From positions 186,001-250,000 of IMG/VR virus record IMGVR_UViG_3300045974_000132: a DNA stretch of 64,000 nt; one strand, 5' to 3'. The notes beneath the pieces are model-generated. The model worked only from the letters and a program-made list of their open reading frames with translations, had not been told where the DNA came from and did no database searches. This document shows positions 16,378-38,606 of the stretch, one piece after another (the first letter of the stretch is position 1; each line of letters opens with the position of its first letter). Made by a program: the position numbers and the translations under genes.

Positions 16378-16917
16378 TTACATGTGTTCTTCAATAACAG
16401 TACCAGCTAGTCTAACTAGGTGCTTGCACAGCATAGGTTGAAGCTGAGGATTGGTAACATTTGGGTGTTCACCGTTGGAATACTTGATCTTAGCACTACC
16501 CCAATGGTTTAGAGCTACCTCACAGTAGTAAAGGAAGTAGTCGCATTGGCAGGATACCAGAACATGCTTCTGCCTAGACAGAGGAATATCCTTTTCCTTA
16601 CCGATAATATCAGTAGCGTACACATTGCGCTGACCTTTATTACCAACAGACAACACCTTTGCACGAATAGCCGGAAAGCCACCCTTGGTGGTAGCCGGCT
16701 TTAGCATCTTGACCAACACTTCATGAGCATTGTTTTTGATGAAAGGCGGGGTAGCACGAATCAAAGCTTTAAGGCTTAAGCCATCTAGCTTATAATCTAT
16801 TGTCTCAGGCTTTGCTTTACCACGAGGTGCAGGGGCTACCTTGTCACGTTTTACCTGAACCGGACTGGGCTTTGTCTGAGCTACGCGTCTTCCTGCTTTA
16901 ATAGTAATCTTTGCCAC
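16378..16917 (-). CDS. SWIM-type zinc finger protein
   Basis: VSCQCDYF...LCKHL. Confidence 0.7.
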   Translation of the reverse strand: MAKITIKAGRRVAQTKPSPVQVKRDKVAPAPRGKAKPETIDYKLDGLSLKALIRATPPFIKNNAHEVLVKMLKPATTKGGFPAIRAKVLSVGNKGQRNVYATDIIGKEKDIPLSRQKHVLVSCQCDYFLYYCEVALNHWGSAKIKYSNGEHPNVTNPQLQPMLCKHLVRLAGTVIEEHM

Positions 16918-16966: not shown

Positions 16967-17329
16967 TTAAGAGGATATGCGCTGCGTAACAGTTGCCCCG
17001 TTCTCAAGGTCTTCAGAAACCTCAACAGAACAATTGCGAACACCGTAGCAGGAGTTCAAATACCCGATCACATTATGTGCAATCATTTCACAAGATCGGT
17101 GTTGCAGATCAGTACCTGTTAAGAACTTATCCAGCCCACGTTTGACCAAGATGAACTCAAGTTCACGATCATCATGGAAGACTTCAATAGTTGCCTTCAC
17201 ATGAAAGATGTGTCGGTGAGGGCTACGAAGGAATGCTACTTCATCAGGGGCATCTGGGTAGCAATGAATGCCTTCAAAAGAAGTAGTAACAAAGATCGTA
17301 GTATGGCAGGAAGTAATCACAGGGACCAT
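16967..17329 (-). CDS. QueD/6-pyruvoyltetrahydropterin synthase-like (T-fold) protein
   Basis: FEGIH...HRHIFHV metal-binding His motif; SCEMIA; VSED. Confidence 0.7.
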   Translation of the reverse strand: MVPVITSCHTTIFVTTSFEGIHCYPDAPDEVAFLRSPHRHIFHVKATIEVFHDDRELEFILVKRGLDKFLTGTDLQHRSCEMIAHNVIGYLNSCYGVRNCSVEVSEDLENGATVTQRISS

Positions 17330-18270
17330 TTGTCAGCCTCAATGTGTTTGAAGAACTCAATAGTTTTCAGAACGCCATCTTCTAAGGGCAGATACAGACG
17401 CTTAGAAAAGACACGCTTATACTTAGACAAGTCAGGCTTACGCACTTTGGGATCATCCGCCGGTAGGTCTTTGTGGATGAATTGATCGAACTTAGTTAAG
17501 CGCCCTACAATATCTGCAAGTTGCTCAATTGTAAACTCTTGGTCATTGCCTAAGTTCATCGGCCCATAGTTGTTATCGTTTGTCATGACCTGCCAGAGCA
17601 TATCAATCATATCACTAACGTAACAGAAGCTACGAGTCTGCTCACCTGAACCATAGATTGTAATAGGCTTGCTTTCGAGAGCTTGAGTGATAAAGTTTGA
17701 AACTACCCGTCCGTCGTTGTAGGCCATGTTAGGCCCATAAGTGTTGAACAGTCGAACAACACGGATATCAACGTTGGTAGTACGCTTATAATCTGCACAA
17801 AGCGTTTCAGCAGCCCGCTTACCTTCATCGTAGCAAGCACGTGGGCCAGTGATACTTACGTTGCCGTTGTACGACTCAGGCTGCGGATGTACTTCAGGGT
17901 CACCGTAAACTTCAGAAGTAGAGGTGAACAGCATACGTGCGCCTGTCTTGTTGGCAAGATCAAGCATGTTTTTCGTGCCGATAACAGAAGTCATCAACGT
18001 CTTAATCGGATCACGCGAATACCACTCAGGGCTTGCAGGACAAGCTAAGTGATATATGTAATCCAGATCAGACAGATAGAAACCAGTATCACAAACATCC
18101 AAATTGATGAAGTGAAAGTTCTTATGTTGCAGGAAGGGCTTAATGTTAGCACCCGATGAACAGCTAAGGTTGTCCAAACAGAACACTTCATTGTTGGGAT
18201 TGCAGAGCAGTCGATAGCAAAGATTACTACCTAGAAAACCTGCACCGCCTGTTACTAGAATGCGTGACAT
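17317..18270 (-). CDS. UDP-glucuronate decarboxylase (UDP-xylose synthase-like SDR)
   Basis: GGAGFLG, HLACPASP, STSEVYGDP, PRACYDEGKR, RLFNTYGP, DGRVVSNF, DDPKVRKPD. Confidence 0.9.
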   Translation of the reverse strand: MSRILVTGGAGFLGSNLCYRLLCNPNNEVFCLDNLSCSSGANIKPFLQHKNFHFINLDVCDTGFYLSDLDYIYHLACPASPEWYSRDPIKTLMTSVIGTKNMLDLANKTGARMLFTSTSEVYGDPEVHPQPESYNGNVSITGPRACYDEGKRAAETLCADYKRTTNVDIRVVRLFNTYGPNMAYNDGRVVSNFITQALESKPITIYGSGEQTRSFCYVSDMIDMLWQVMTNDNNYGPMNLGNDQEFTIEQLADIVGRLTKFDQFIHKDLPADDPKVRKPDLSKYKRVFSKRLYLPLEDGVLKTIEFFKHIEADKWSL

Positions 18271-19463
18271 TACAATCTTCCTTGTGTTAGAGCATAACAG
18301 ATTTGAGTATCACCGATGTAGTGTTCCATGAGCATACCGGACTGCTGCAATAGACCATTACTTCCATAAGAAGGATCATCAAACTGCGTAAGCATTTCCT
18401 TGATCTTATTAACCAATTCTTCTTTATGGGCAAGATAACTTTCAAAGCTAAGTGTCCATTCAGAAGGATACAAGAAACGTTTGAAGTACATTTCGGAGTA
18501 CGACAAACGATCAGGGCTTAGAGACATGGCACCTGCAAAGATAGCTTCTGTCTGTGCAATACCGTAAGTCTCCTGCAGTGCTGCGGAGAATACAAGCTTG
18601 CTGCGACCTAGAAGATCATGATACTCGGGTTTAGTCAGTTGCTTTTCCTGACACACAATAAACTTGTAGTCCTCATATCCAGGTTCATTAGCAAACGTGT
18701 TTTCAAGGTCGTAGAAGATTTCAATTTGCTTCTCAGGAGCAATACGATGTGGGAAGAGAATGATGTTCTCTTTAGGCTTTACACTGTAGGGCGCAAGCTT
18801 ATCAAACAGATACGAATTCGGATAGCCTACCCGCAGAATCTTTTCACGAAGACTTGCCTGTGTTTCGTCACCCGCTAGTAGGTAGTCCCTTAGCCTTGAG
18901 AAGAATAGCTTGATATAAGCCTCGGTAGTGAATAGGTTTATATCAATAGCGTGAAACAAAGATGCTTCAAAAGCAGGAGCCCATTCACTCTTGATCTTAC
19001 GCCCTAAGAAGTCATTGGGGTCATGCCAACCCGCGTGCCATTGCCCAACAATAGTAACAGGGATGTCAAGCAAGTCCGACATGTAGCGCACTTGGATGAT
19101 TGCAGGATTCCAAGCATCTGTGAAGTAGAACACATCGCCAGGCTGAACACGATCATTATGGAAGTGATCTGCAATCTTTTGAGCCTGTGAAGACTTCCAA
19201 ACATTCGTAGAAGCAAAGTTAATGAAGGCACCAGTAGAAGCATCTTGCGTAGGCATATCGCCTTCGATGTTAACCAAACGGACCTCGGGTGTATTATACT
19301 CACGGAAGTGGGCATAGTGCCACGCATCATCTTGGCGCAAAAACTTGATGTTGTTTTGAGCGCAATACTTTTCAATCATTGCAGGGATGTGATCTGCCCA
19401 CTCATACGTGTAACGAGTTTCAATCTTTTCCAGTGGCACCAGCCAGATTGTTTTCATAGTCAT
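18270..19463 (-). CDS. GT-B fold glycosyltransferase
   Basis: FPHRIAPEK and QETYGIAQTEA (Ex7E) motifs. Confidence 0.8.
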   Translation of the reverse strand: MTMKTIWLVPLEKIETRYTYEWADHIPAMIEKYCAQNNIKFLRQDDAWHYAHFREYNTPEVRLVNIEGDMPTQDASTGAFINFASTNVWKSSQAQKIADHFHNDRVQPGDVFYFTDAWNPAIIQVRYMSDLLDIPVTIVGQWHAGWHDPNDFLGRKIKSEWAPAFEASLFHAIDINLFTTEAYIKLFFSRLRDYLLAGDETQASLREKILRVGYPNSYLFDKLAPYSVKPKENIILFPHRIAPEKQIEIFYDLENTFANEPGYEDYKFIVCQEKQLTKPEYHDLLGRSKLVFSAALQETYGIAQTEAIFAGAMSLSPDRLSYSEMYFKRFLYPSEWTLSFESYLAHKEELVNKIKEMLTQFDDPSYGSNGLLQQSGMLMEHYIGDTQICYALTQGRL

Positions 19464-19465
19464 GG

Positions 19466-19654
19466 TTATTTAATCTCAGGAATGCACATCATCAAAGCTT
19501 TATGGGCTTCTTCAACGTGACGGACGTAAACTACTACTCCATCATTCATATCATTGATTGCTGCCTTCGTACAAGCCAGTTGAACATCAGTAGGCGTTAT
19601 AGGAAGCAGAGCGTATTTTGTTTCGTCGTAGGTGATTGTTTTCATAAGATGCAA
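19466..19654 (-). CDS. small hypothetical protein
   Basis: inside the tightly coupled operon. Confidence 0.5.
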   Translation of the reverse strand: MHLMKTITYDETKYALLPITPTDVQLACTKAAINDMNDGVVVYVRHVEEAHKALMMCIPEIK

Positions 19655-20055
19655 AGATCGGACAGAGTTAGTACCGCTATGTTAGGGCGCAATTCTGCTA
19701 TGCGTGATGCGATCTTCTCACAGCTTTCTACAAAGATGGTAATATTGTTTTCGTCGATAGCGTTTACTTTGAATAGAGCAGACTCTTCTGTATCCAAAAC
19801 CTTATCTTCAGAATTATGTACGACACGGCACCGCAATTGGAAATAATTCTGTGCCCAAATATAAGTATCGTGATAGTCAGAAGACGGACGACCTGTAACA
19901 ATGTAGAAGTGTTCATGCTGCGGTATGAACAAAGGCTTCAGATGATACCTAGCCTTAACTACCGACATTAATTGTTCTTGTGATAAACCTTCTACGTTAA
20001 TGTCAGGGCATAATATTCCGTCAAGATCATACCCATAAATGTCAGCTAGTCCCAT
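19642..20055 (-). CDS. HAD-superfamily phosphatase-like protein
   Basis: YDLDGIL, VTGR, conserved K, FVES. Confidence 0.7.
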   Translation of the reverse strand: MGLADIYGYDLDGILCPDINVEGLSQEQLMSVVKARYHLKPLFIPQHEHFYIVTGRPSSDYHDTYIWAQNYFQLRCRVVHNSEDKVLDTEESALFKVNAIDENNITIFVESCEKIASRIAELRPNIAVLTLSDLCIL

Positions 20056-20512
20056 ATTTACTACTCCCTTCGCTAAACAAATTCTTATCGCCTACTGTTA
20101 CTTTACAGCTTTCTTCATTTGGCATAATAAGCCATTTGTCTTTAGCAACTTCTCCGACTAAATCTACTTCGTAGTCACCTACCTGGAATACCGCAGAGTA
20201 CATAACTTCTTTGTTAGGGAAGAATTTGTCAAGGTAGTATTTAACTAGATCGAATGTACGTCCTTGATCGACCATGTCATCGACGACCAACAATCGTTGA
20301 AATAGGTCTAGACCTGCCGATTGGGTCATATGACCATATCGAATAATAAAAGCAATAGGTAGGTTCAATGCTTTAGCAATGATATGGGAAGCAGTCATGC
20401 CCCCGCGGGCAATACAAAGTACAGCGTCTGGCCTAAACAGTTGAGCCTGCTCTGACATGCTCAAACAAAGAGCTTTAAACTCAGTGTAAGGAACTTCATA
20501 AGGTTGGATCAT
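20042..20512 (-). CDS. type I purine phosphoribosyltransferase (XGPRT-like)
   Basis: IARGG; LLVVDDMVDQGRT PRPP loop; WLIMP. Confidence 0.85.
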   Translation of the reverse strand: MIQPYEVPYTEFKALCLSMSEQAQLFRPDAVLCIARGGMTASHIIAKALNLPIAFIIRYGHMTQSAGLDLFQRLLVVDDMVDQGRTFDLVKYYLDKFFPNKEVMYSAVFQVGDYEVDLVGEVAKDKWLIMPNEESCKVTVGDKNLFSEGSSKYGTS

Positions 20513-21357
20513 ACATAGTCCACTGCGATAGGAAAGTCAGGTAGTGCTAAACGAGTCTCTACCTGACGTTGATAGAAGTCACTATGATCTTCCAGATTAT
20601 CACTCCAGTCGAACGTCTTCATACCTACATGCTCAATATAAGCACCAAGCATCAAGTAGATAGGGACTTTGTTCTCGACCAGAGCTTCTTGGATCATGCA
20701 GTCATAGCCGCGCATACCTTTCTTCCAATTACTCATTGACTCAAGAACAGACCAAGCACAATTGTTGTAATGGAAGAGGAAGAATCTAACAGGAATTATC
20801 CAGCCGTTGCTGATATAGTCAGTACGAATAACTTCTGTTTTATCCGTAGCCCATTTCTGGTGAGCAACGCTCTTGATACCAAAACGTTCAACGAAAGGAA
20901 CAAGATGGTGCATATAACGAAGCTCATTACTCCAGTCGTCATAGCTATGAACATTCATAACGTCAACCGCCGCGCACGTTATAACTTTGTTCTTACAGAA
21001 GCCTTGACGAATAGCATACTGAAGCAACGCCAACGTCTTGTAAGGAAATATATGGTCATCATCAACATTGAATACCAGATCAGTAGTAAGCAGTTCCCTT
21101 ATAACGCGTGCCTTCGATTGAGCAACAGACAGTTCCGGTGAATGATTATGAATAACAAGAGTATTGTTATTAGCTTGGGCAATTTGCTGAAGCAAATAAA
21201 GATGCTCAAAGGTATCAGAATCATACTGGAAGCAAACATGCCATCTAACGCATTCAACGTTGCTCAGAATGTTTGCCATTGTTGCAAATAACTCTGTCTT
21301 ACGCCCTTGCCCTGTAACAGTCAGCAAGTTAAGAGCCATGCCTCTGAAGTTTATCAT
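20509..21357 (-). CDS. putative GT-A fold glycosyltransferase
   Basis: VFNVDDDH DxD motif; later GYD and EH; operon context. Confidence 0.6.
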   Translation of the reverse strand: MINFRGMALNLLTVTGQGRKTELFATMANILSNVECVRWHVCFQYDSDTFEHLYLLQQIAQANNNTLVIHNHSPELSVAQSKARVIRELLTTDLVFNVDDDHIFPYKTLALLQYAIRQGFCKNKVITCAAVDVMNVHSYDDWSNELRYMHHLVPFVERFGIKSVAHQKWATDKTEVIRTDYISNGWIIPVRFFLFHYNNCAWSVLESMSNWKKGMRGYDCMIQEALVENKVPIYLMLGAYIEHVGMKTFDWSDNLEDHSDFYQRQVETRLALPDFPIAVDYV

Positions 21358-22745
21358 TTCAGTTGATTCTCCAAGCTAGCCAGCAGATTAGAAGTACGCT
21401 CATACAATTCCTTCTGCGAAGACTTTTCAGAAGTAGAGGTTGTATCGAACAAAGACTGCGGTATGTCATCAGACTGACGCCAGTTGTTAATATGGCGCGC
21501 ATACTTCTTCTGAGCTTCCTTAAGACCGTGCTGTGTAACCACATCAATGTAATCGAGAGCCAGCTTAACGTCAGCTTTGTTCTTGATGTTCTTCAGTTGG
21601 AGTATAACGTACTTGTTATACTCATGAGGAGTAAGGTGTCGACAGGCTTCCTGAAGAGACTGGGTATATCGAGCCATCTGAATCGCATTGTGCAGCGCCA
21701 AAAATCCATTGAAGCGATTATGGCCGAATGCAAATATATCCCGATACTTGATTGCTCCGCACACTGGGCAACTGCAATTTAGATGCAAAGCAGGGTTTGA
21801 GATACTACCTGCTTTAGTTCCGTATGCTTGCCTACTCATAATGTGTTGCTCATTCATCTGAATATGGTAGACGTTATTCAGAGAGGCTTGAATGTGACTG
21901 GTACTGTCGCTAGTGATATGAGGAGGATTGTCACCGCTGTTTGCAATCTTAACCAGCAGAGCCAGATAAGACATATCAAACACACCTAGTGCGTGATATT
22001 GCTTATAGCGATACGACCCACCTTCAATGATCTCATATAACGTGTTGACACCTGTGAGGGGCTTTTGTAGAAGAAGACCGCCGATAGCAACCCGCGGAAT
22101 ACGTTCGTCTTCAACAATGTCCCGATACTTTTTGCGATCTTCAACGCTGCCTCCGTGAAATATATTGATTAGCTCTAAGCCCTTACGCCCATTCTTCAGC
22201 ATAACCTCATTGTTCTTACGCTGGAGAAGTGCTGCTCGTTTAGCGATCTTGTCATCCTTAATCCACAACGGAATGTCAAGTACCATACCTGCATCGACGT
22301 TCTTGTTGTAGAACTCAACCAAGTCTTTCGGATGAATCAGTCCAGCTACTTCCCGTGCTAATTGCAGACCGCCGCTGTCAGAAAGAATTTGAACTTTCTT
22401 TGCACTAGCAGGCAGGGAATCACGATTGATAGCTTCACTATTGTTATGCGTGAAGTTGGTCATGAAGTAGTCGATACCAATACCTGCGCCAAGATCATCA
22501 CGGAAGGTATTTAGATCGAGACACAGATCAAAGGATTCATTCGGATAGAACGCATCATCGTTGAATGAGTCCCGGACGAACACGAATTCCCGATCAGGAC
22601 AATCATACCAGATATAGTTCTTATCTACCCGTTTAATGGTGATTTCGTTAGACTTTGTTTTCTTGTATTTGACATAGATAGTCAAGCCGCCATAATTCTG
22701 AAACAAGTTGGCGGCCGCCACAAACCGATAGCCGTTGAAGTCCAT
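21354..22745 (-). CDS. tRNA-guanine transglycosylase / DpdA-like base-exchange enzyme
   Basis: SDSGGLQ, VLDIP, GGL, HALG, SDSTS and Zn site CSCPVC...HN. Confidence 0.85.
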   Translation of the reverse strand: MDFNGYRFVAAANLFQNYGGLTIYVKYKKTKSNEITIKRVDKNYIWYDCPDREFVFVRDSFNDDAFYPNESFDLCLDLNTFRDDLGAGIGIDYFMTNFTHNNSEAINRDSLPASAKKVQILSDSGGLQLAREVAGLIHPKDLVEFYNKNVDAGMVLDIPLWIKDDKIAKRAALLQRKNNEVMLKNGRKGLELINIFHGGSVEDRKKYRDIVEDERIPRVAIGGLLLQKPLTGVNTLYEIIEGGSYRYKQYHALGVFDMSYLALLVKIANSGDNPPHITSDSTSHIQASLNNVYHIQMNEQHIMSRQAYGTKAGSISNPALHLNCSCPVCGAIKYRDIFAFGHNRFNGFLALHNAIQMARYTQSLQEACRHLTPHEYNKYVILQLKNIKNKADVKLALDYIDVVTQHGLKEAQKKYARHINNWRQSDDIPQSLFDTTSTSEKSSQKELYERTSNLLASLENQLK

Positions 22746-22811: not shown

Positions 22812-22835
22812 AAAAGGGTAGCTCAAAGGCTACCC
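22812..22835 (-). terminator. intrinsic terminator GGGTAGC/GCTACCC-TTTT
   Basis: 7-bp stem plus T tract after the Cas4-like gene. Confidence 0.7.
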
Positions 22836-37387: not shown

Positions 37388-37611
37388 CTACGCCTACGCC
37401 TACACAACATGATCTGACACGCGAAGAAGCAATTGCATGGGCTATTGCAAACAACTGTAATTTCCAAGCACCTGTGTTTCCTCCGCCTCAGGGTTGGATG
37501 TGGGCTGATCGAGCAGTTGGTGGGGTGTATAGTATTATTCTTACTCCAGTGTTCACAAATACTGAAGACGCTGAAATAACTATCTCTGATTTAATTAAGG
37601 ATATAACATAA
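37384..37611 (+). CDS. hypothetical protein
   Basis: translationally coupled at both ends. Confidence 0.6.
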   Translation: MTTPTPTQHDLTREEAIAWAIANNCNFQAPVFPPPQGWMWADRAVGGVYSIILTPVFTNTEDAEITISDLIKDIT

Positions 37612-38606
37612 TGAAACAATACTTAGACCTTCTTCGTCGAATTCGTGATACAGGTACGCGTCAAGCTAATCGCACAGGCATTGATTCAATCTTTGTACCT
37701 GGCGCCATGATGCAGTTTGACCTACGCGAAGGCTTCCCAGCTGTCACAACAAAGAAGTTGTTCTTCAAGAAGACTATTGGTGAGAACATCGGCTTCTTGC
37801 AAGGTAAGGACAACGCTGCTGACTTTCGTGCATTAGGTTGTGACATTTGGGATGGCAATGCTAATCGTGACGGCGTTGATCTTGCAGGTAATGTAGTACC
37901 TAATCTGTGGCTGACAAACAAGAATCGCAAAGGTGAAGATGATCTTGGTCGCATCTATGGTGTGCAATGGCGTCACTGGCGTGGCAAGCCTATTCTGAAA
38001 GAATCTACTCCTGTATTTTCTGATGCAAAGAATATGCACTTCCTAGCTGAAATGGACTTCATTGAAGTCGATCAAGTTCAAAACATCCTGGCAAAACTCA
38101 AGACCAATCCTACAGATCGTCGCATGATTATCAATGCTTGGCGTCCTGATGAATTCGATCAGATGGCTTTGCCTCCGTGTCACATCATGTACCAGTTCAT
38201 TGCCAACGTTGAAAAGAATGAACTGCACCTGTGTATGTACCAGCGTAGCTGTGATATGTTCCTCGGTGTTCCGTTTAATATCGCAGGCTCTTCGATCTTG
38301 CTTACTGTGATTGCTGCTTTGACAGGCTTCCAACCTGCTACCTTCACTCACTTCTTAGCTGATGCTCATATCTATGTGAATCACCTTGAGCAGATTGAAC
38401 TGCAACTCAGTCGTGAACCTAAGCAAGCACCTGTTCTTGCTTACACAGGTCCAGGTAGCGAAGAGTGGAACTCTGAAAATGAAATTCCACTATATTCAAG
38501 TGACGGCATTATCTGTGCCTCAGTGTTTGATGAATTGAAGCCTGAACACTTCAACCTTCTTGACTACGATCCGCATCCTGCAATCAAAGCTGACATGGCT
38601 GTATAA
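37611..38606 (+). CDS. thyA: thymidylate synthase
   Basis: RTG, GFPAVTTKK, YGVQWR, ALPPCH, YQRSCD..LGVPFN, DAHIY. Confidence 0.97.
   Translation: MKQYLDLLRRIRDTGTRQANRTGIDSIFVPGAMMQFDLREGFPAVTTKKLFFKKTIGENIGFLQGKDNAADFRALGCDIWDGNANRDGVDLAGNVVPNLWLTNKNRKGEDDLGRIYGVQWRHWRGKPILKESTPVFSDAKNMHFLAEMDFIEVDQVQNILAKLKTNPTDRRMIINAWRPDEFDQMALPPCHIMYQFIANVEKNELHLCMYQRSCDMFLGVPFNIAGSSILLTVIAALTGFQPATFTHFLADAHIYVNHLEQIELQLSREPKQAPVLAYTGPGSEEWNSENEIPLYSSDGIICASVFDELKPEHFNLLDYDPHPAIKADMAV

What the first reader, a model, noticed from the sequence alone, without database searches (positions are those of the whole stretch)
16967..22745. Candidate sugar-decorated 7-deazaguanine hypermodification operon: TGT/DpdA + QueD + two glycosyltransferases + UDP-xylose synthase
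Seen: eight co-oriented, overlapping or abutting genes: TGT-fold base-exchange enzyme, GT-A, purine PRTase, HAD phosphatase, a small ORF, GT-B, UDP-glucuronate decarboxylase and a QueD-like protein. Known: phage DpdA enzymes insert 7-deazaguanines (preQ0 derivatives) into DNA; QueD acts in preQ0 synthesis; UXS-type SDRs make UDP-xylose; glycosylated queuosine exists in eukaryotic tRNA. Inference: the operon installs a deazaguanine and then adds one or two sugars, probably including xylose, to DNA. I know of no characterised base of this kind. The PRTase and HAD could recycle released guanine or activate and edit the modified base. An alternative target is tRNA. FolE, QueE, QueC and UDP-glucose dehydrogenase are not in this window.
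Basis: partly seen in the sequence, partly recalled or inferred. Interest (0 to 1): 0.85.

Follow-up and report, generated by a model that had tools for sequence, protein, structure and literature searches.

The report
Candidate sugar-decorated deazaguanine DNA modification operon
A jumbo phage carries a tight operon that pairs a guanine-swapping enzyme with a deazaguanine-processing enzyme, two sugar transferases and a UDP-xylose synthase; the same core trio recurs in many phages, including Pseudomonas phage PA5oct, and probably makes a sugar-bearing 7-deazaguanine in DNA, a base nobody has yet described.

Summary
Seven solid genes, plus one doubtful 62-aa ORF, lie co-oriented and overlapping or abutting on the minus strand at 16967-22745 of a 286-kb jumbo-phage contig.

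The 120-aa "QueD-like" protein is a DpdL-type T-fold protein. It carries LxxxHRHxF instead of QueD's CxxxHGH. DpdL is the proposed 7-carboxy-7-deazaguanine decarboxylase of phiST and ACP17.

The decisive evidence is comparative. The TGT-like gene and a SWIM zinc-finger gene are core replication-module genes of this phage clade. The slot between them holds a variable cassette: nothing, QueC, GDP-mannose synthesis plus GTs, or xylose synthesis plus GTs as here.

The GT-B family has at least 549 clusters. It sits beside DpdL, a TGT-superfamily gene and often QueE/FolE/QueD in unrelated phages: PA5oct-like, ACP17, Xanthomonas X1, BCSR5 and Phosso. PA5oct DNA resists restriction at G-containing sites, but its base has not been identified.

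My best reading is a glycosylated (xylose-containing) 7-deazaguanine in DNA. The attachment site, the role of the PRTase/HAD pair and the source of the precursor remain open. I found no paper describing such a base.

The parts
21354..22745 (-). TGT-superfamily base-exchange enzyme (DpdA-like), a core gene of this jumbo-phage clade
   Evidence: Alignment A1 has invariant D123-S124-G125-G126..Q128, D151/D157, D280 and the Zn site C324-C326-C329..H352. The profile hits ArcTGT 1iq8 at 7e-8, and 12 of 26 homologs match PF01702. The AF2 model (pLDDT 88.6) matches TGT structures at probability 1.0. The gene is syntenic between a Cas4-like exonuclease and a sigma factor in all relatives.
20509..21357 (-). 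GT-A (GT2-like) glycosyltransferase, probably adding a second sugar
   Evidence: Atlas feature score is 0.97 to viral and bacterial PF00535 clusters, and structural TM is 0.66. D99-D100-D101 (DxD) is invariant in A9. Homologs occur in the cassettes of L003 and L006 and in L037.
20042..20512 (-). Type I 6-oxopurine phosphoribosyltransferase (XGPRT-like)
   Evidence: PF00156 at 2.7e-8, above cutoff. Profile A3 hits 1vdm purine PRTase at 9e-23, Sulfolobus GpT, and E. coli XGPRT at 6e-15. Relatives sit in deazaguanine clusters L023, L037, L038, L043, L045, L065 and PA5oct-like phages. In L100 it is fused to DpdL.
19642..20055 (-). Small capless HAD phosphatase, always adjacent to the PRTase in this clade
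   Evidence: Atlas scores 0.92-0.95 to viral HAD_PNKP/NT5C clusters; a bacterial PRTase fusion has the same fold. D10-L-D12-G13, T54, K96 and E110-S111 are invariant. It is paired with the PRTase in L003, L010, L100 and the contig of P0002.
19466..19654 (-). 62-aa ORF with a TTG start, of doubtful reality
   Evidence: It has no homolog in any fetched locus. In the 82%-identical relative, HAD and GT-B are only 6 bp apart with no such gene.
18270..19463 (-). GT4-type GT-B glycosyltransferase, the conserved partner of DpdL and TGT-like genes across phage lineages
   Evidence: The AF2 model (pLDDT 90.3) has BshA, MshA, glycogen synthase and PglA as best matches. E298-x7-E306 is invariant. It is 37-41% identical to the GTs next to DpdL in ACP17, PA5oct-like phages and Phosso. 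The family has 549 clusters at E<=1e-30.
17317..18270 (-). UDP-glucuronate decarboxylase (UDP-xylose synthase)
   Evidence: phmmer hits human UXS1 4gll at 3e-95 (322 bits), against 1e-36 for the next family. PF01370 at 1.6e-52. GxxGxxG and YDEGK motifs are visible in the sequence.
16967..17329 (-). DpdL-type T-fold protein (proposed 7-carboxy-7-deazaguanine decarboxylase), not QueD
   Evidence: It carries the LxxxHRHxF motif, read here as L-RSP-HRH-I-F, which is the DpdL signature in Cui et al. 2023. tblastn hits ACP17 at 2e-18 and phiST CGPG_00067 at 1e-9. Alignment A5 separates DpdL from QueD.
16378..16917 (-). SWIM-type zinc-finger protein, invariant downstream partner of the TGT-like gene
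   Evidence: It matches phrog_18980. A homolog follows the TGT-like gene directly in cassette-less relatives and follows the cassette elsewhere. CxC...CxH (C123, C125, C164, H166) is invariant.
22816..22835 (-). Terminator-like hairpin marking the upstream boundary of the operon
   Evidence: The consensus scan finds a 7-bp GC-rich stem plus a T run between the Cas4-like exonuclease gene and the TGT-like gene. The overall number of such sites is not above the shuffled controls, so this is weak evidence.

Best explanation
This is a 7-deazaguanine nucleic-acid hypermodification island, most likely acting on the phage's own DNA.

Proposed pathway:
1. The TGT-like enzyme, working with its SWIM zinc-finger partner, exchanges guanine for a 7-deazaguanine base.
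2. The DpdL-type T-fold enzyme converts 7-carboxy-7-deazaguanine (CDG) to the base that is used. The CDG is either host-made or made by genes elsewhere in the genome.
3. The conserved GT4-type GT-B attaches a first sugar to that base, either before or after insertion.
4. The phage UXS turns host UDP-glucuronate into UDP-xylose, so that xylose is one of the sugars.
5. The GT-A adds a further sugar.
6. The XGPRT-like PRTase and the HAD phosphatase handle the purine or deazapurine base as nucleotide/nucleoside. This could be deazapurine activation, as in tubercidin and toyocamycin biosynthesis, or removal of released guanine.

The slot between the TGT-like and SWIM genes is a swap-in cassette. 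It diversifies the decoration between related phages (nothing, QueC, mannose, xylose, methyl), as expected in an arms race with restriction and modification-dependent nucleases.

What is shown: gene identities, operon structure, and the conserved linkage of TGT, DpdL and GT-B. What is inferred: DNA as the target, the sugar being on the deazaguanine, the order of steps, and the attachment atom.
For: Folds and motifs are supported.

The TGT-like family is linked to deazaguanine genes in relatives:
- QueC right after it in L007.
- QueD and QueE flanking it in L012.
- QueE and FolE in L037.
- QueD, DpdL and QueE in BCSR5.

The cassette families stay with the TGT-like gene despite different gene orders in L003/L004, L010, L100 and the contig of P0002.

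GT-B homologs lie beside DpdL and a TGT-superfamily gene in several settings:
- ACP17, PA5oct-like PAC2, Phosso, X1 and BCSR5, with hhalign probabilities of 93-99.8% to A1.
- 12 of 80 IMG/VR QueE loci within 6 kb.
- 3 of 3 random members of the 549-cluster family.

Sugar-nucleotide enzymes co-vary with the GTs:
- UXS here and in L003, L010 and L100.
- ManC in L006.
- Other SDRs in L028, L031, L035 and PA5oct-like phages.
- A PIG-L deacetylase in BCSR5.

There is chemical precedent. The GT4-type HuiG glycosylates a nitrogen of a preQ0-derived free base, and the tubercidin pathway uses CDG with a PRTase, a decarboxylase and a hydrolase (10.64898/2026.04.15.718813).

The window's ThyA homolog is canonical (D169 and N177 equivalents kept), so no hydroxylated pyrimidine acceptor is evident. 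The Zn site is retained, unlike in the protein-targeting Cap10.
Against: - No chemistry is available for this phage or for any phage with the GT-B/DpdL pair.
- 7-deazaguanine itself offers no obvious hydroxyl acceptor.
- The decarboxylase activity of DpdL is only proposed. Expression in E. coli alongside the respective dpdA genes gave no dDG.
- FolE, QueD, QueE and Ugd are absent from the 64-kb window. No QueE from the 286,393-bp contig appeared among the best 120 of 3022 profile hits.
- An N9-directed PRTase would compete with a base-exchange enzyme for free base.
- The model of the TGT-like protein is closest to tRNA enzymes, and no DpdA structure appeared in the top 50.
- BLAST finds no similarity to DpdA1-4 phages.
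Confidence: 0.55

Rival explanations
1. The operon makes a free glycosylated deazapurine nucleoside or base, a small molecule like tubercidin, toyocamycin, huimycin or dapiramicin. Such a compound might poison the host or competing phages. Under this reading the PRTase, DpdL, HAD and GTs form the pathway and the neighbouring TGT-like enzyme does a separate job.
For: - PRTase plus hydrolase plus decarboxylase acting on CDG is the tubercidin logic, and a GT4 enzyme acting on a deazapurine base is the huimycin logic.
- A PRT::DpdL fusion exists in L100.
- The PRTase and HAD are always adjacent, and a bacterial PRTase-HAD fusion is known.
- The GT-B is structurally closest to the small-molecule GTs BshA and MshA.
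Against: - GT-B and DpdL are adjacent to a TGT-superfamily gene in every lineage examined, including those without a PRTase or HAD, such as ACP17, X1 and Phosso.
- The genes sit in replication modules.
- PA5oct DNA behaves as G-modified.
- No transporter or regulator genes accompany them.
Confidence: 0.15
2. There are two independent functions that happen to be neighbours. The TGT-like enzyme installs a plain deazaguanine. The GT, UXS, PRTase and HAD genes glycosylate something else: another DNA base (for example 5-hydroxy- or 5-hydroxymethyl-pyrimidine), virion proteins or host surface glycans.
For: - Phage DNA glycosylation known so far is on pyrimidines (PMC13326640).
- HAD phosphatases serve sugar activation in those systems.
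- The cassette is absent from many relatives that keep the TGT-like gene.
- Only 64 kb of the 286-kb genome was seen.
Against: - The GT-B family is almost never seen away from DpdL, TGT-like and QueE genes.
- DpdL itself belongs to the cassette and travels with GT-B.
- The window's ThyA is canonical and pairs with a dCTP deaminase.
- No signal peptides or membrane GTs were seen.
Confidence: 0.12
3. The target is tRNA, from the host or the phage. The TGT-like enzyme would insert a deazaguanine at position 34 or 15 and the GTs would decorate it, as with mannosyl- and galactosyl-queuosine in animals.
For: - Foldseek's best matches are the tRNA enzymes QTRT1, ArcTGT and bacterial TGT.
- A GT-B and a GT-A decorate queuosine in eukaryotes (background knowledge, and the Atlas row for QTMAN).
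Against: - No tRNA gene lies in the window.
- The gene is embedded among primase, exonuclease, SSB-like, RecA/UvsX and clamp-loader genes.
- According to Cui et al. [quoted passage not shown]
- The related PA5oct module correlates with restriction-resistant DNA.
- No QueA or QueG genes are present to build the cyclopentenediol that carries the sugars in queuosine.
Confidence: 0.08
4. Incorporation is pre-replicative. The PRTase makes 7-deaza-GMP from the DpdL product, host or phage kinases and the phage RNR make the dNTP, and the polymerase incorporates it. The TGT-like enzyme would only top up or proofread.
For: - The PRT::DpdL fusion.
- A class II RNR in the window.
- An XGPRT-like PRTase would accept a 6-oxopurine analogue at N9.
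- 7-deaza-dGTP is a good polymerase substrate (background knowledge).
Against: - The HAD phosphatase next to the PRTase would undo nucleotide formation.
- Many trio-bearing phages lack the PRTase.
- The literature argues that deazaguanines enter post-replicatively through DpdA.
Confidence: 0.1

Closest known systems
Phage DpdA / 7-deazaguanine DNA modification systems (dPreQ0, dADG, dG+, dPreQ1 and derivatives, dCDG, dDG; DpdA1-4, DpdL, DpdM, DpdN; Hutinet 2019, Cui 2023)
   Same: - A TGT-superfamily enzyme sits in a phage replication module.
- A DpdL-type T-fold protein is present with the exact LxxxHRHxF signature.
- Relatives of the TGT-like gene lie next to QueC, QueD, QueE and FolE.
   Different: - The TGT-like protein is not BLAST-detectable against phages carrying DpdA1-4. 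It is nearest to BCSR5, and only profile-level to the ACP17/X1 group.
- No glycosyltransferase, UXS, PRTase or HAD has been assigned a role in those systems.
- No sugar-bearing deazaguanine is known.
PA5oct-like (Wroclawvirus) jumbo phages, Acidovorax phage ACP17, Xanthomonas phage X1/BUDD, Burkholderia phage BCSR5, Sinorhizobium phage Phosso
   Same: - They carry the same trio of TGT-superfamily gene, GT4-type GT-B (23-41% identical) and DpdL, usually with QueE and FolE.
- PA5oct-like phages also have an SDR fragment and a related PRTase in the same operon.
- PA5oct DNA behaves as G-modified.
   Different: - The TGT subfamilies differ.
- Those phages carry QueE in the same cluster, whereas here none is seen within the window.
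- Only this clade adds a bona fide UXS, a GT-A and a HAD.
Glycosylated pyrimidines in phage DNA (T-even glucosyl-hmC; arabinosyl-5-hydroxycytosine of RB69/DLP3; hexosyl-5hoC of RL38JI)
   Same: - Phage-encoded GTs are paired with phage-encoded sugar-nucleotide synthesis.
- Sugar identity varies between relatives.
- The likely role is evasion of nucleases.
   Different: The acceptor there is a hydroxyl made by a ThyA homolog on a pyrimidine mononucleotide. Here ThyA is canonical and the GTs travel with purine (deazaguanine) machinery.
Deazapurine natural-product pathways (tubercidin, toyocamycin, huimycin, dapiramicin)
   Same: - CDG-based chemistry using a PRTase, a decarboxylation step and a phosphatase or hydrolase.
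- A GT4-type GT that glycosylates a deazaguanine-type base.
   Different: - Those are actinomycete gene clusters without a transglycosylase, and they yield free metabolites.
- Their decarboxylase is UbiD-type, not T-fold.
Mannosyl- and galactosyl-queuosine in animal tRNA (QTMAN, QTGAL)
   Same: One GT-B and one GT-A enzyme decorate a TGT-inserted 7-deazaguanine.
   Different: - The sugars attach to the cyclopentenediol of queuosine, which cannot be built here.
- The substrate there is tRNA.
- No specific homology was shown.

Membership tests
TGT superfamily (PF01702) | TIM-barrel TGT fold | tested here: met
   The AF2 model (pLDDT 88.6, pTM 0.88) gives Foldseek probability 1.0 and TM 0.5-0.6 to QTRT1, ArcTGT and Z. 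mobilis TGT. The profile hits 1iq8 at 7e-8.
TGT superfamily (PF01702) | Catalytic aspartates (DSGG motif and nucleophile Asp) and the CxCxxC...H zinc site | tested here: met
   D123-S-G-G..Q128, D157, D280 and C324/C326/C329/H352 are invariant in 26 sequences. Equivalence to Z. mobilis D102/D156/D280 rests on motif comparison, not on structural superposition.
DpdA (DNA-specific guanine transglycosylases, subfamilies bDpdA and DpdA1-4) | Sequence membership in a named subfamily | tested here: not met
   tblastn against 50,697 phage records finds only 20 jumbo-phage records and none of the known DpdA1-4 phages. hhalign reaches the ACP17 DpdA3 candidate only at 95.6% probability and finds nothing with phiST CGPG_00065 as a single sequence.
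DpdA (DNA-specific guanine transglycosylases, subfamilies bDpdA and DpdA1-4) | Co-location with 7-deazaguanine synthesis genes | tested here: met
   DpdL is in the operon. Relatives lie next to QueC (L007), QueD/QueE (L012), QueE/FolE (L037) and QueD/DpdL/QueE (BCSR5).
DpdA (DNA-specific guanine transglycosylases, subfamilies bDpdA and DpdA1-4) | Exchanges guanine in DNA | not testable with these tools
   Only the genomic context (replication module) and PA5oct restriction data bear on this.
DpdL (proposed CDG decarboxylase) | LxxxHRHxF replacing QueD's CxxxHGH, and homology to phiST CGPG_00067 and the ACP17 protein | tested here: met
   The motif is present. tblastn gives 2e-18 to ACP17 and 1e-9 to phiST. 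Alignment A5 groups the protein with 9 DpdL sequences and apart from 4 QueD sequences.
DpdL (proposed CDG decarboxylase) | Decarboxylates CDG to 7-deazaguanine | not testable with these tools
   The activity is not demonstrated in the literature either.
   The Cys is replaced by Leu and HGH by HRH. There is no PF01242 hit, although true QueD proteins of BCSR5 hit it at 2.7e-15.
UDP-glucuronate decarboxylase (UXS) | Close homology to characterised UXS, an extended SDR with GxxGxxG and YxxxK | tested here: met
   Human UXS1 at 3e-95 over residues 2-308; the next family scores 1e-36. The GGAGFLGS and YDEGK motifs are visible.
GT4-type retaining GT-B glycosyltransferases | Two-Rossmann GT-B fold and EX7E motif | tested here: met
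   Foldseek gives probability 1.0 to BshA, MshA, PglA and glycogen synthase. E298 and E306 are invariant. BCSR5 and ACP17 homologs hit PF00534. The window protein itself has no Pfam hit.
GT-A (GT2-like) glycosyltransferases | GT-A fold with DxD | tested here: met
   Atlas score 0.97 and TM 0.61-0.66 to PF00535 clusters (the Atlas model's pLDDT is only 0.60). DDD is invariant. There is no Pfam hit, so confidence is moderate.
Type I 6-oxopurine PRTases (XGPRT-like) | PRPP-binding loop and homology to purine PRTases | tested here: met
   PF00156 above cutoff. The VVDDMVDQGRT loop is present. The profile hits 1vdm at 9e-23 and XGPRT at 6e-15. Substrate was not tested.
HAD phosphatases | DxD nucleophile motif, Thr, Lys and an acidic motif IV | tested here: inconclusive
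   The motifs are invariant in only 3 sequences. Atlas features score 0.90-0.95 to HAD_PNKP/NT5C clusters. There is no Pfam or PDB sequence hit.
Pyrimidine DNA glycosylation systems (hmC/5hoC) | ThyA homolog with altered specificity residues (N177D or D169N) | tested here: not met
   The window's ThyA keeps PPCH and YQRSCDMFLGVPFN, that is D169 and N177, and scores 239 bits on TIGR03284. The rest of the genome was not seen.
Cap10-like protein-targeting TGT (type IV CBASS) | Loss of the Zn site and of the nucleic-acid surface, with a QueC-like Cap9 partner | tested here: not met
   The Zn ligands are invariant, whereas Cap10 lacks them. No CD-NTase or Cap9 gene is nearby.

The most novel reading that the evidence does not exclude
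The TGT + DpdL + GT4-type GT-B trio defines a widespread, uncharacterised class of phage DNA hypermodification. The GT-B family alone has at least 549 protein clusters, and the trio spans PA5oct-like, Busanvirus, Xanthomonas, Burkholderia, Sinorhizobium and many uncultured jumbo phages. In this class a 7-deazaguanine would carry a glycan, which would be the first sugar-decorated purine in any DNA. Attachment could use unusual chemistry, either N-glycosylation of the 2-amino group as in huimycin-type compounds (attachment site recalled from memory, not confirmed here) or C-glycosylation of the pyrrole carbon. Cassette swapping would set the sugar: xylose here, mannose, GlcN or methyl elsewhere.
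Probability: 0.45. Interest if true: 0.9.

Novelty: new variant of a known kind. Interest (0 to 1): 0.78.

Why it matters
If the reading is right, it adds a new chemical class to natural DNA: a glycosylated purine analogue. It would also explain the unidentified G modification of the therapy-candidate phage PA5oct.

It would give a function to a large orphan glycosyltransferase family. It may also explain why DpdL, expressed in E. coli alongside the respective dpdA genes, gave no product, since partner enzymes may have been missing.

The cassette organisation, with a fixed base-exchange core and interchangeable decoration modules, is a clear example of modular diversification under pressure from restriction enzymes and modification-dependent nucleases such as the END nucleases. 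The enzymes could become tools for site-specific sugar labelling of DNA.

The hypothesis can be tested directly in several cultured phages.

Tried and rejected
- **Single-sequence searches.** Pfam, NCBIfam, PHROGs and PDB searches on single sequences were mostly blank for the TGT-like, GT-A, HAD, GT-B and DpdL proteins. Profiles, models and motifs were needed instead.
- **Megablast.** A search of the region against 50,697 phage records gave no match.
- **Search for folE, queD, queE and queC.**
  - tblastn of phage FolE, QueD, QueE and QueC against the window found nothing.
  - The QueE profile search of the protein collection listed only 120 of 3022 hits, none from the 286,393-bp contig. This is weak negative evidence.
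  - The remaining 222 kb of the contig could not be read with the flank limits.
- **Supplementary tables.** Those of Cui et al. are not held, so the ACP17 dpdA gene identity (ASD50403) is inferred from hhalign.
- **DpdA3 comparison.** phiST DpdA3 as a single sequence does not align to the TGT-like profile.
- **Promoters and terminators.** Promoter-like and terminator-like sites are not enriched over shuffled controls.
- **Literature.** Searches found no report of a glycosylated deazaguanine in DNA.
- **Rejected: GTs acting on hydroxylated pyrimidines.** ThyA is canonical.
- **Rejected: Cap10-like protein deazaguanylation.** The Zn site is retained.
- **Rejected: QueD identity of the 120-aa protein.**
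- **Rejected: L010's 308-aa gene as a GT-A.** It is a SAM methyltransferase.

Full report
**Source and setting.** The window is bases 186,001-250,000 of IMG/VR contig IMGVR_UViG_3300045974_000132 (286,393 bp). This is an uncultured jumbo phage with no near-identical relative among 50,697 GenBank phage records. GC content is about 0.42-0.44 across the operon and about 0.40-0.48 elsewhere in the window. That gives no sign of recent import from a donor of different composition.

**Observation.** The ORF list confirms a minus-strand run of genes at these positions:
- 22745..21354
- 21357..20509
- 20512..20042
- 20055..19642
- 19654..19466
- 19463..18270
- 18270..17317
- 17329..16967

Junctions are 1-14 bp overlaps or a 2 bp gap. 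A terminator-like hairpin at 22816-22835 lies between the upstream Cas4-like exonuclease gene and the first gene. The count of such sites is not above the shuffled controls, so this is weak evidence.

**Gene identities.** As single sequences, only the PRTase and the SDR match Pfam.

- *463-aa protein, TGT superfamily.*
  - 78 homologs were found.
  - In a 26-sequence alignment, DSGG..Q, two further aspartates, D280 and the CxCxxC...H zinc site are invariant.
  - The profile hits archaeosine TGT 1iq8 at 7e-8, and 12 of 26 members match PF01702.
  - An AF2 model (pLDDT 88.6) matches QTRT1, ArcTGT and bacterial TGT at probability 1.0.
- *282-aa protein, GT-A.* Atlas score 0.97 and TM 0.66 to GT2 clusters, with an invariant DDD.
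- *156-aa protein, XGPRT-like 6-oxopurine PRTase*.
- *137-aa protein, small HAD.* The DxDG, T, K and ES motifs are present.
- *397-aa protein, GT4-type GT-B with EX7E.* The AF2 model (pLDDT 90.3) has BshA and MshA as best matches.
- *317-aa protein, UDP-xylose synthase.* It hits human UXS1 at 3e-95, against 1e-36 for the next family.
- *120-aa protein, DpdL not QueD.*
  - It carries LxxxHRHxF, the signature that Cui et al. 2023 give for DpdL against QueD's CxxxHGH.
  - It hits ACP17 and phiST CGPG_00067.
  - It aligns with DpdL sequences and apart from true QueD sequences.
- *62-aa ORF.* It has no homolog and is missing from the closest relative.

**A core pair with a variable cassette.** The order below is conserved in Pseudomonas putida jumbo phages, Vibrio phage GR7B and all metagenomic relatives:

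primase, Cas4-like exonuclease, TGT-like gene, a ~150-180-aa protein, sigma factor, SSB-like protein, RecA/UvsX.

The small protein (window 16378-16917) has an invariant CxC...CxH SWIM zinc-finger signature.

What lies between the TGT-like and SWIM genes varies from phage to phage:

| Locus | Content of the slot |
|---|---|
| L005, Peetri, GR7B, L011 | nothing |
| L012 | nothing in the slot; QueD upstream of the TGT-like gene, QueE after the SWIM gene |
| L007 | QueC |
| L006/L009 | GT-A, DpdL, GT-B, GDP-mannose pyrophosphorylase/isomerase |
| L010 | HAD, PRTase, SAM methyltransferase, GT-B, UXS, DpdL |
| L003/L004 | DpdL, GT-B, UXS, GT-A, PRTase, HAD |
| L100 | HAD, PRT::DpdL fusion, GT-B, UXS |
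| This window and the contig of P0002 | GT-A, PRTase, HAD, GT-B, UXS, DpdL |

The same families therefore stay with the TGT-like gene through several rearrangements. The sugar-supply gene changes with the cassette.

**The trio beyond this clade.** Homologs of the GT-B (23-41% identical) occur in the phage collection almost only next to DpdL and deazaguanine genes.

| Phage | Gene order |
|---|---|
| ACP17 | QueD, FolE, 424-aa TGT-like, GT-B, DpdL, QueE |
| PA5oct-like PAC2 | 540-aa TGT-like, GT-B, DpdL, 86-aa, SDR fragment, PRTase, QueE |
| Phosso | DpdL, GT-B, FolE, QueE |
| Xanthomonas X1 | FolE, GT-B, TGT, DpdL, QueE |
| BCSR5 | QueD, DpdL, PIG-L deacetylase, GT, TGT, QueE |

Among 80 IMG/VR loci fetched through QueE, 12 have the GT-B within 6 kb, 9 have DpdL and several have the PRTase. 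A profile of the GT-B finds 549 clusters at E<=1e-30. All three members sampled at random sit beside DpdL and close to a TGT-superfamily gene. Three different TGT subfamilies are involved, so the linkage is functional rather than inherited by descent.

[quoted passage not shown] Its authors inferred a modified G and noted QueE and PTPS genes, but they did not determine the base (PMC12191111). In phiST, which has DpdL and DpdA3 but no GT-B, all dG is replaced by 2'-deoxy-7-deazaguanosine. DpdL expressed in E. coli alongside the respective dpdA genes gave no product, and the authors suggested that other enzymes may be needed.

**Mechanism.** Most likely, the TGT-like enzyme inserts a DpdL-derived 7-deazaguanine into phage DNA. 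The GT-B then attaches a sugar to it, the UXS supplies UDP-xylose, and the GT-A extends the glycan.

Which GT uses UDP-xylose is uncertain. L010 and L100 have a UXS with only the GT-B, which favours the GT-B.

Two lines suggest that some GT-B homologs use UDP-GlcNAc, as HuiG does on a deazapurine base. First, the GT-B's structural neighbours BshA and MshA use it. Second, BCSR5 has a PIG-L deacetylase next to its GT, which parallels the BshA/BshB and MshA/MshB pairs (that pairing is background knowledge).

The attachment atom is unknown. The 2-amino group or the nucleophilic pyrrole carbon are the options I can see, and both are inference.

The PRTase and HAD are the least certain parts.
- The PRT::DpdL fusion and the tubercidin logic of CDG plus PRTase, decarboxylase and hydrolase point to phosphoribosylation of the deazapurine.
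- The XGPRT-like profile, and the PRTase's presence in QueC-type clusters without GTs (L065), also fit removal of released guanine.

**Rivals.** The main alternatives are weighed in their own section of this report:
- a free deazapurine glycoside metabolite;
- unrelated neighbouring functions;
- tRNA as the target;
- pre-replicative incorporation.

Pyrimidine glycosylation is disfavoured. The window's ThyA keeps the D169 and N177 equivalents that are changed in 5-hydroxy-dCMP and dCMP-specific enzymes. A Cap10-like protein-targeting role is disfavoured because the zinc site is retained.

**Limits.**
- No chemistry exists for this phage or its relatives.
- The precursor genes FolE, QueD, QueE and Ugd are not in the window.
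- The other 222 kb of the contig could not be read, and the two indirect searches for a QueE on it were uninformative or only weakly negative.

**Verdict.** The island is a new variant of the deazaguanine DNA-modification systems. It has a conserved but uncharacterised glycosyltransferase partner and a xylose-specific cassette, and it can be tested directly in cultured phages.

Noticed in passing
L100:1534-2457: A single 307-aa protein fuses a PRTase domain (residues ~31-92) to a DpdL domain (~178-303). It lies between the HAD and GT-B genes in a relative whose TGT-like protein is 46% identical to the window's. This suggests the PRTase and DpdL share a substrate.
   Followed up: partly
L003:16336-18282 and L010:16104-17924: The SWIM-protein homolog is interrupted by an intein with a LAGLIDADG endonuclease (PF14890/PF14528), giving products of 606-648 aa. 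The window's copy (179 aa) is intein-free.
   Followed up: no
window:13836-15173 (-): This 445-aa protein is conserved next to the sigma factor and is annotated as SSB in Peetri. About half of it is an extraordinary C-terminal tail of alternating poly-Asp/Glu and Lys/Ala/Pro-rich repeats.
   Followed up: no
L101:2337-6815: Three tandem paralogs (515, 445 and 523 aa) of the ACP17 424-aa TGT-like (DpdA3-candidate) protein precede a radical-SAM gene, DpdL and GT-B.
   Followed up: no
L010:12332-13258: In this relative a class I SAM methyltransferase (PF13489, 1.4e-18) occupies the place of the GT-A. This suggests methylation as an alternative decoration.
   Followed up: partly
L014 (Burkholderia phage BCSR5 MW460245.1, 14186-14893): A PIG-L/LmbE-family deacetylase lies beside the GT and TGT genes, alongside an AAA_28 protein and a PAPS-reductase-like protein. 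This points to a GlcNAc-then-deacetylate route like the BshA/BshB pair.
   Followed up: no
window:19466-19654 (-): A 178-bp gap between the HAD and GT-B genes holds only a TTG-initiated 62-aa ORF with no homologs. In the 82%-identical relative the two genes are 6 bp apart.
   Followed up: partly
window:15208-16320 (-): A phage sigma-70-family factor (region 2 only, PF04542 at 6.7e-7) is conserved right after the SWIM gene across the clade. Promoters of the operon are therefore probably not sigma-70 type, and the sigma-70 scan was not enriched over shuffles.
   Followed up: no
window:25219-25908, 37611-38606 and further plus-strand genes: The window also encodes a dCTP deaminase, a canonical ThyA, a class II RNR, a clamp loader, a MoxR/VWA pair, a lytic transglycosylase and a tail sheath protein. 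It has no tRNA genes.
   Followed up: partly
L037:1196-2425: A DUF2264 protein (3.8e-58) lies between a GT-A-like gene and the PRTase, upstream of a TGT-like gene, QueE and FolE. This is another, different decoration cassette.
   Followed up: no
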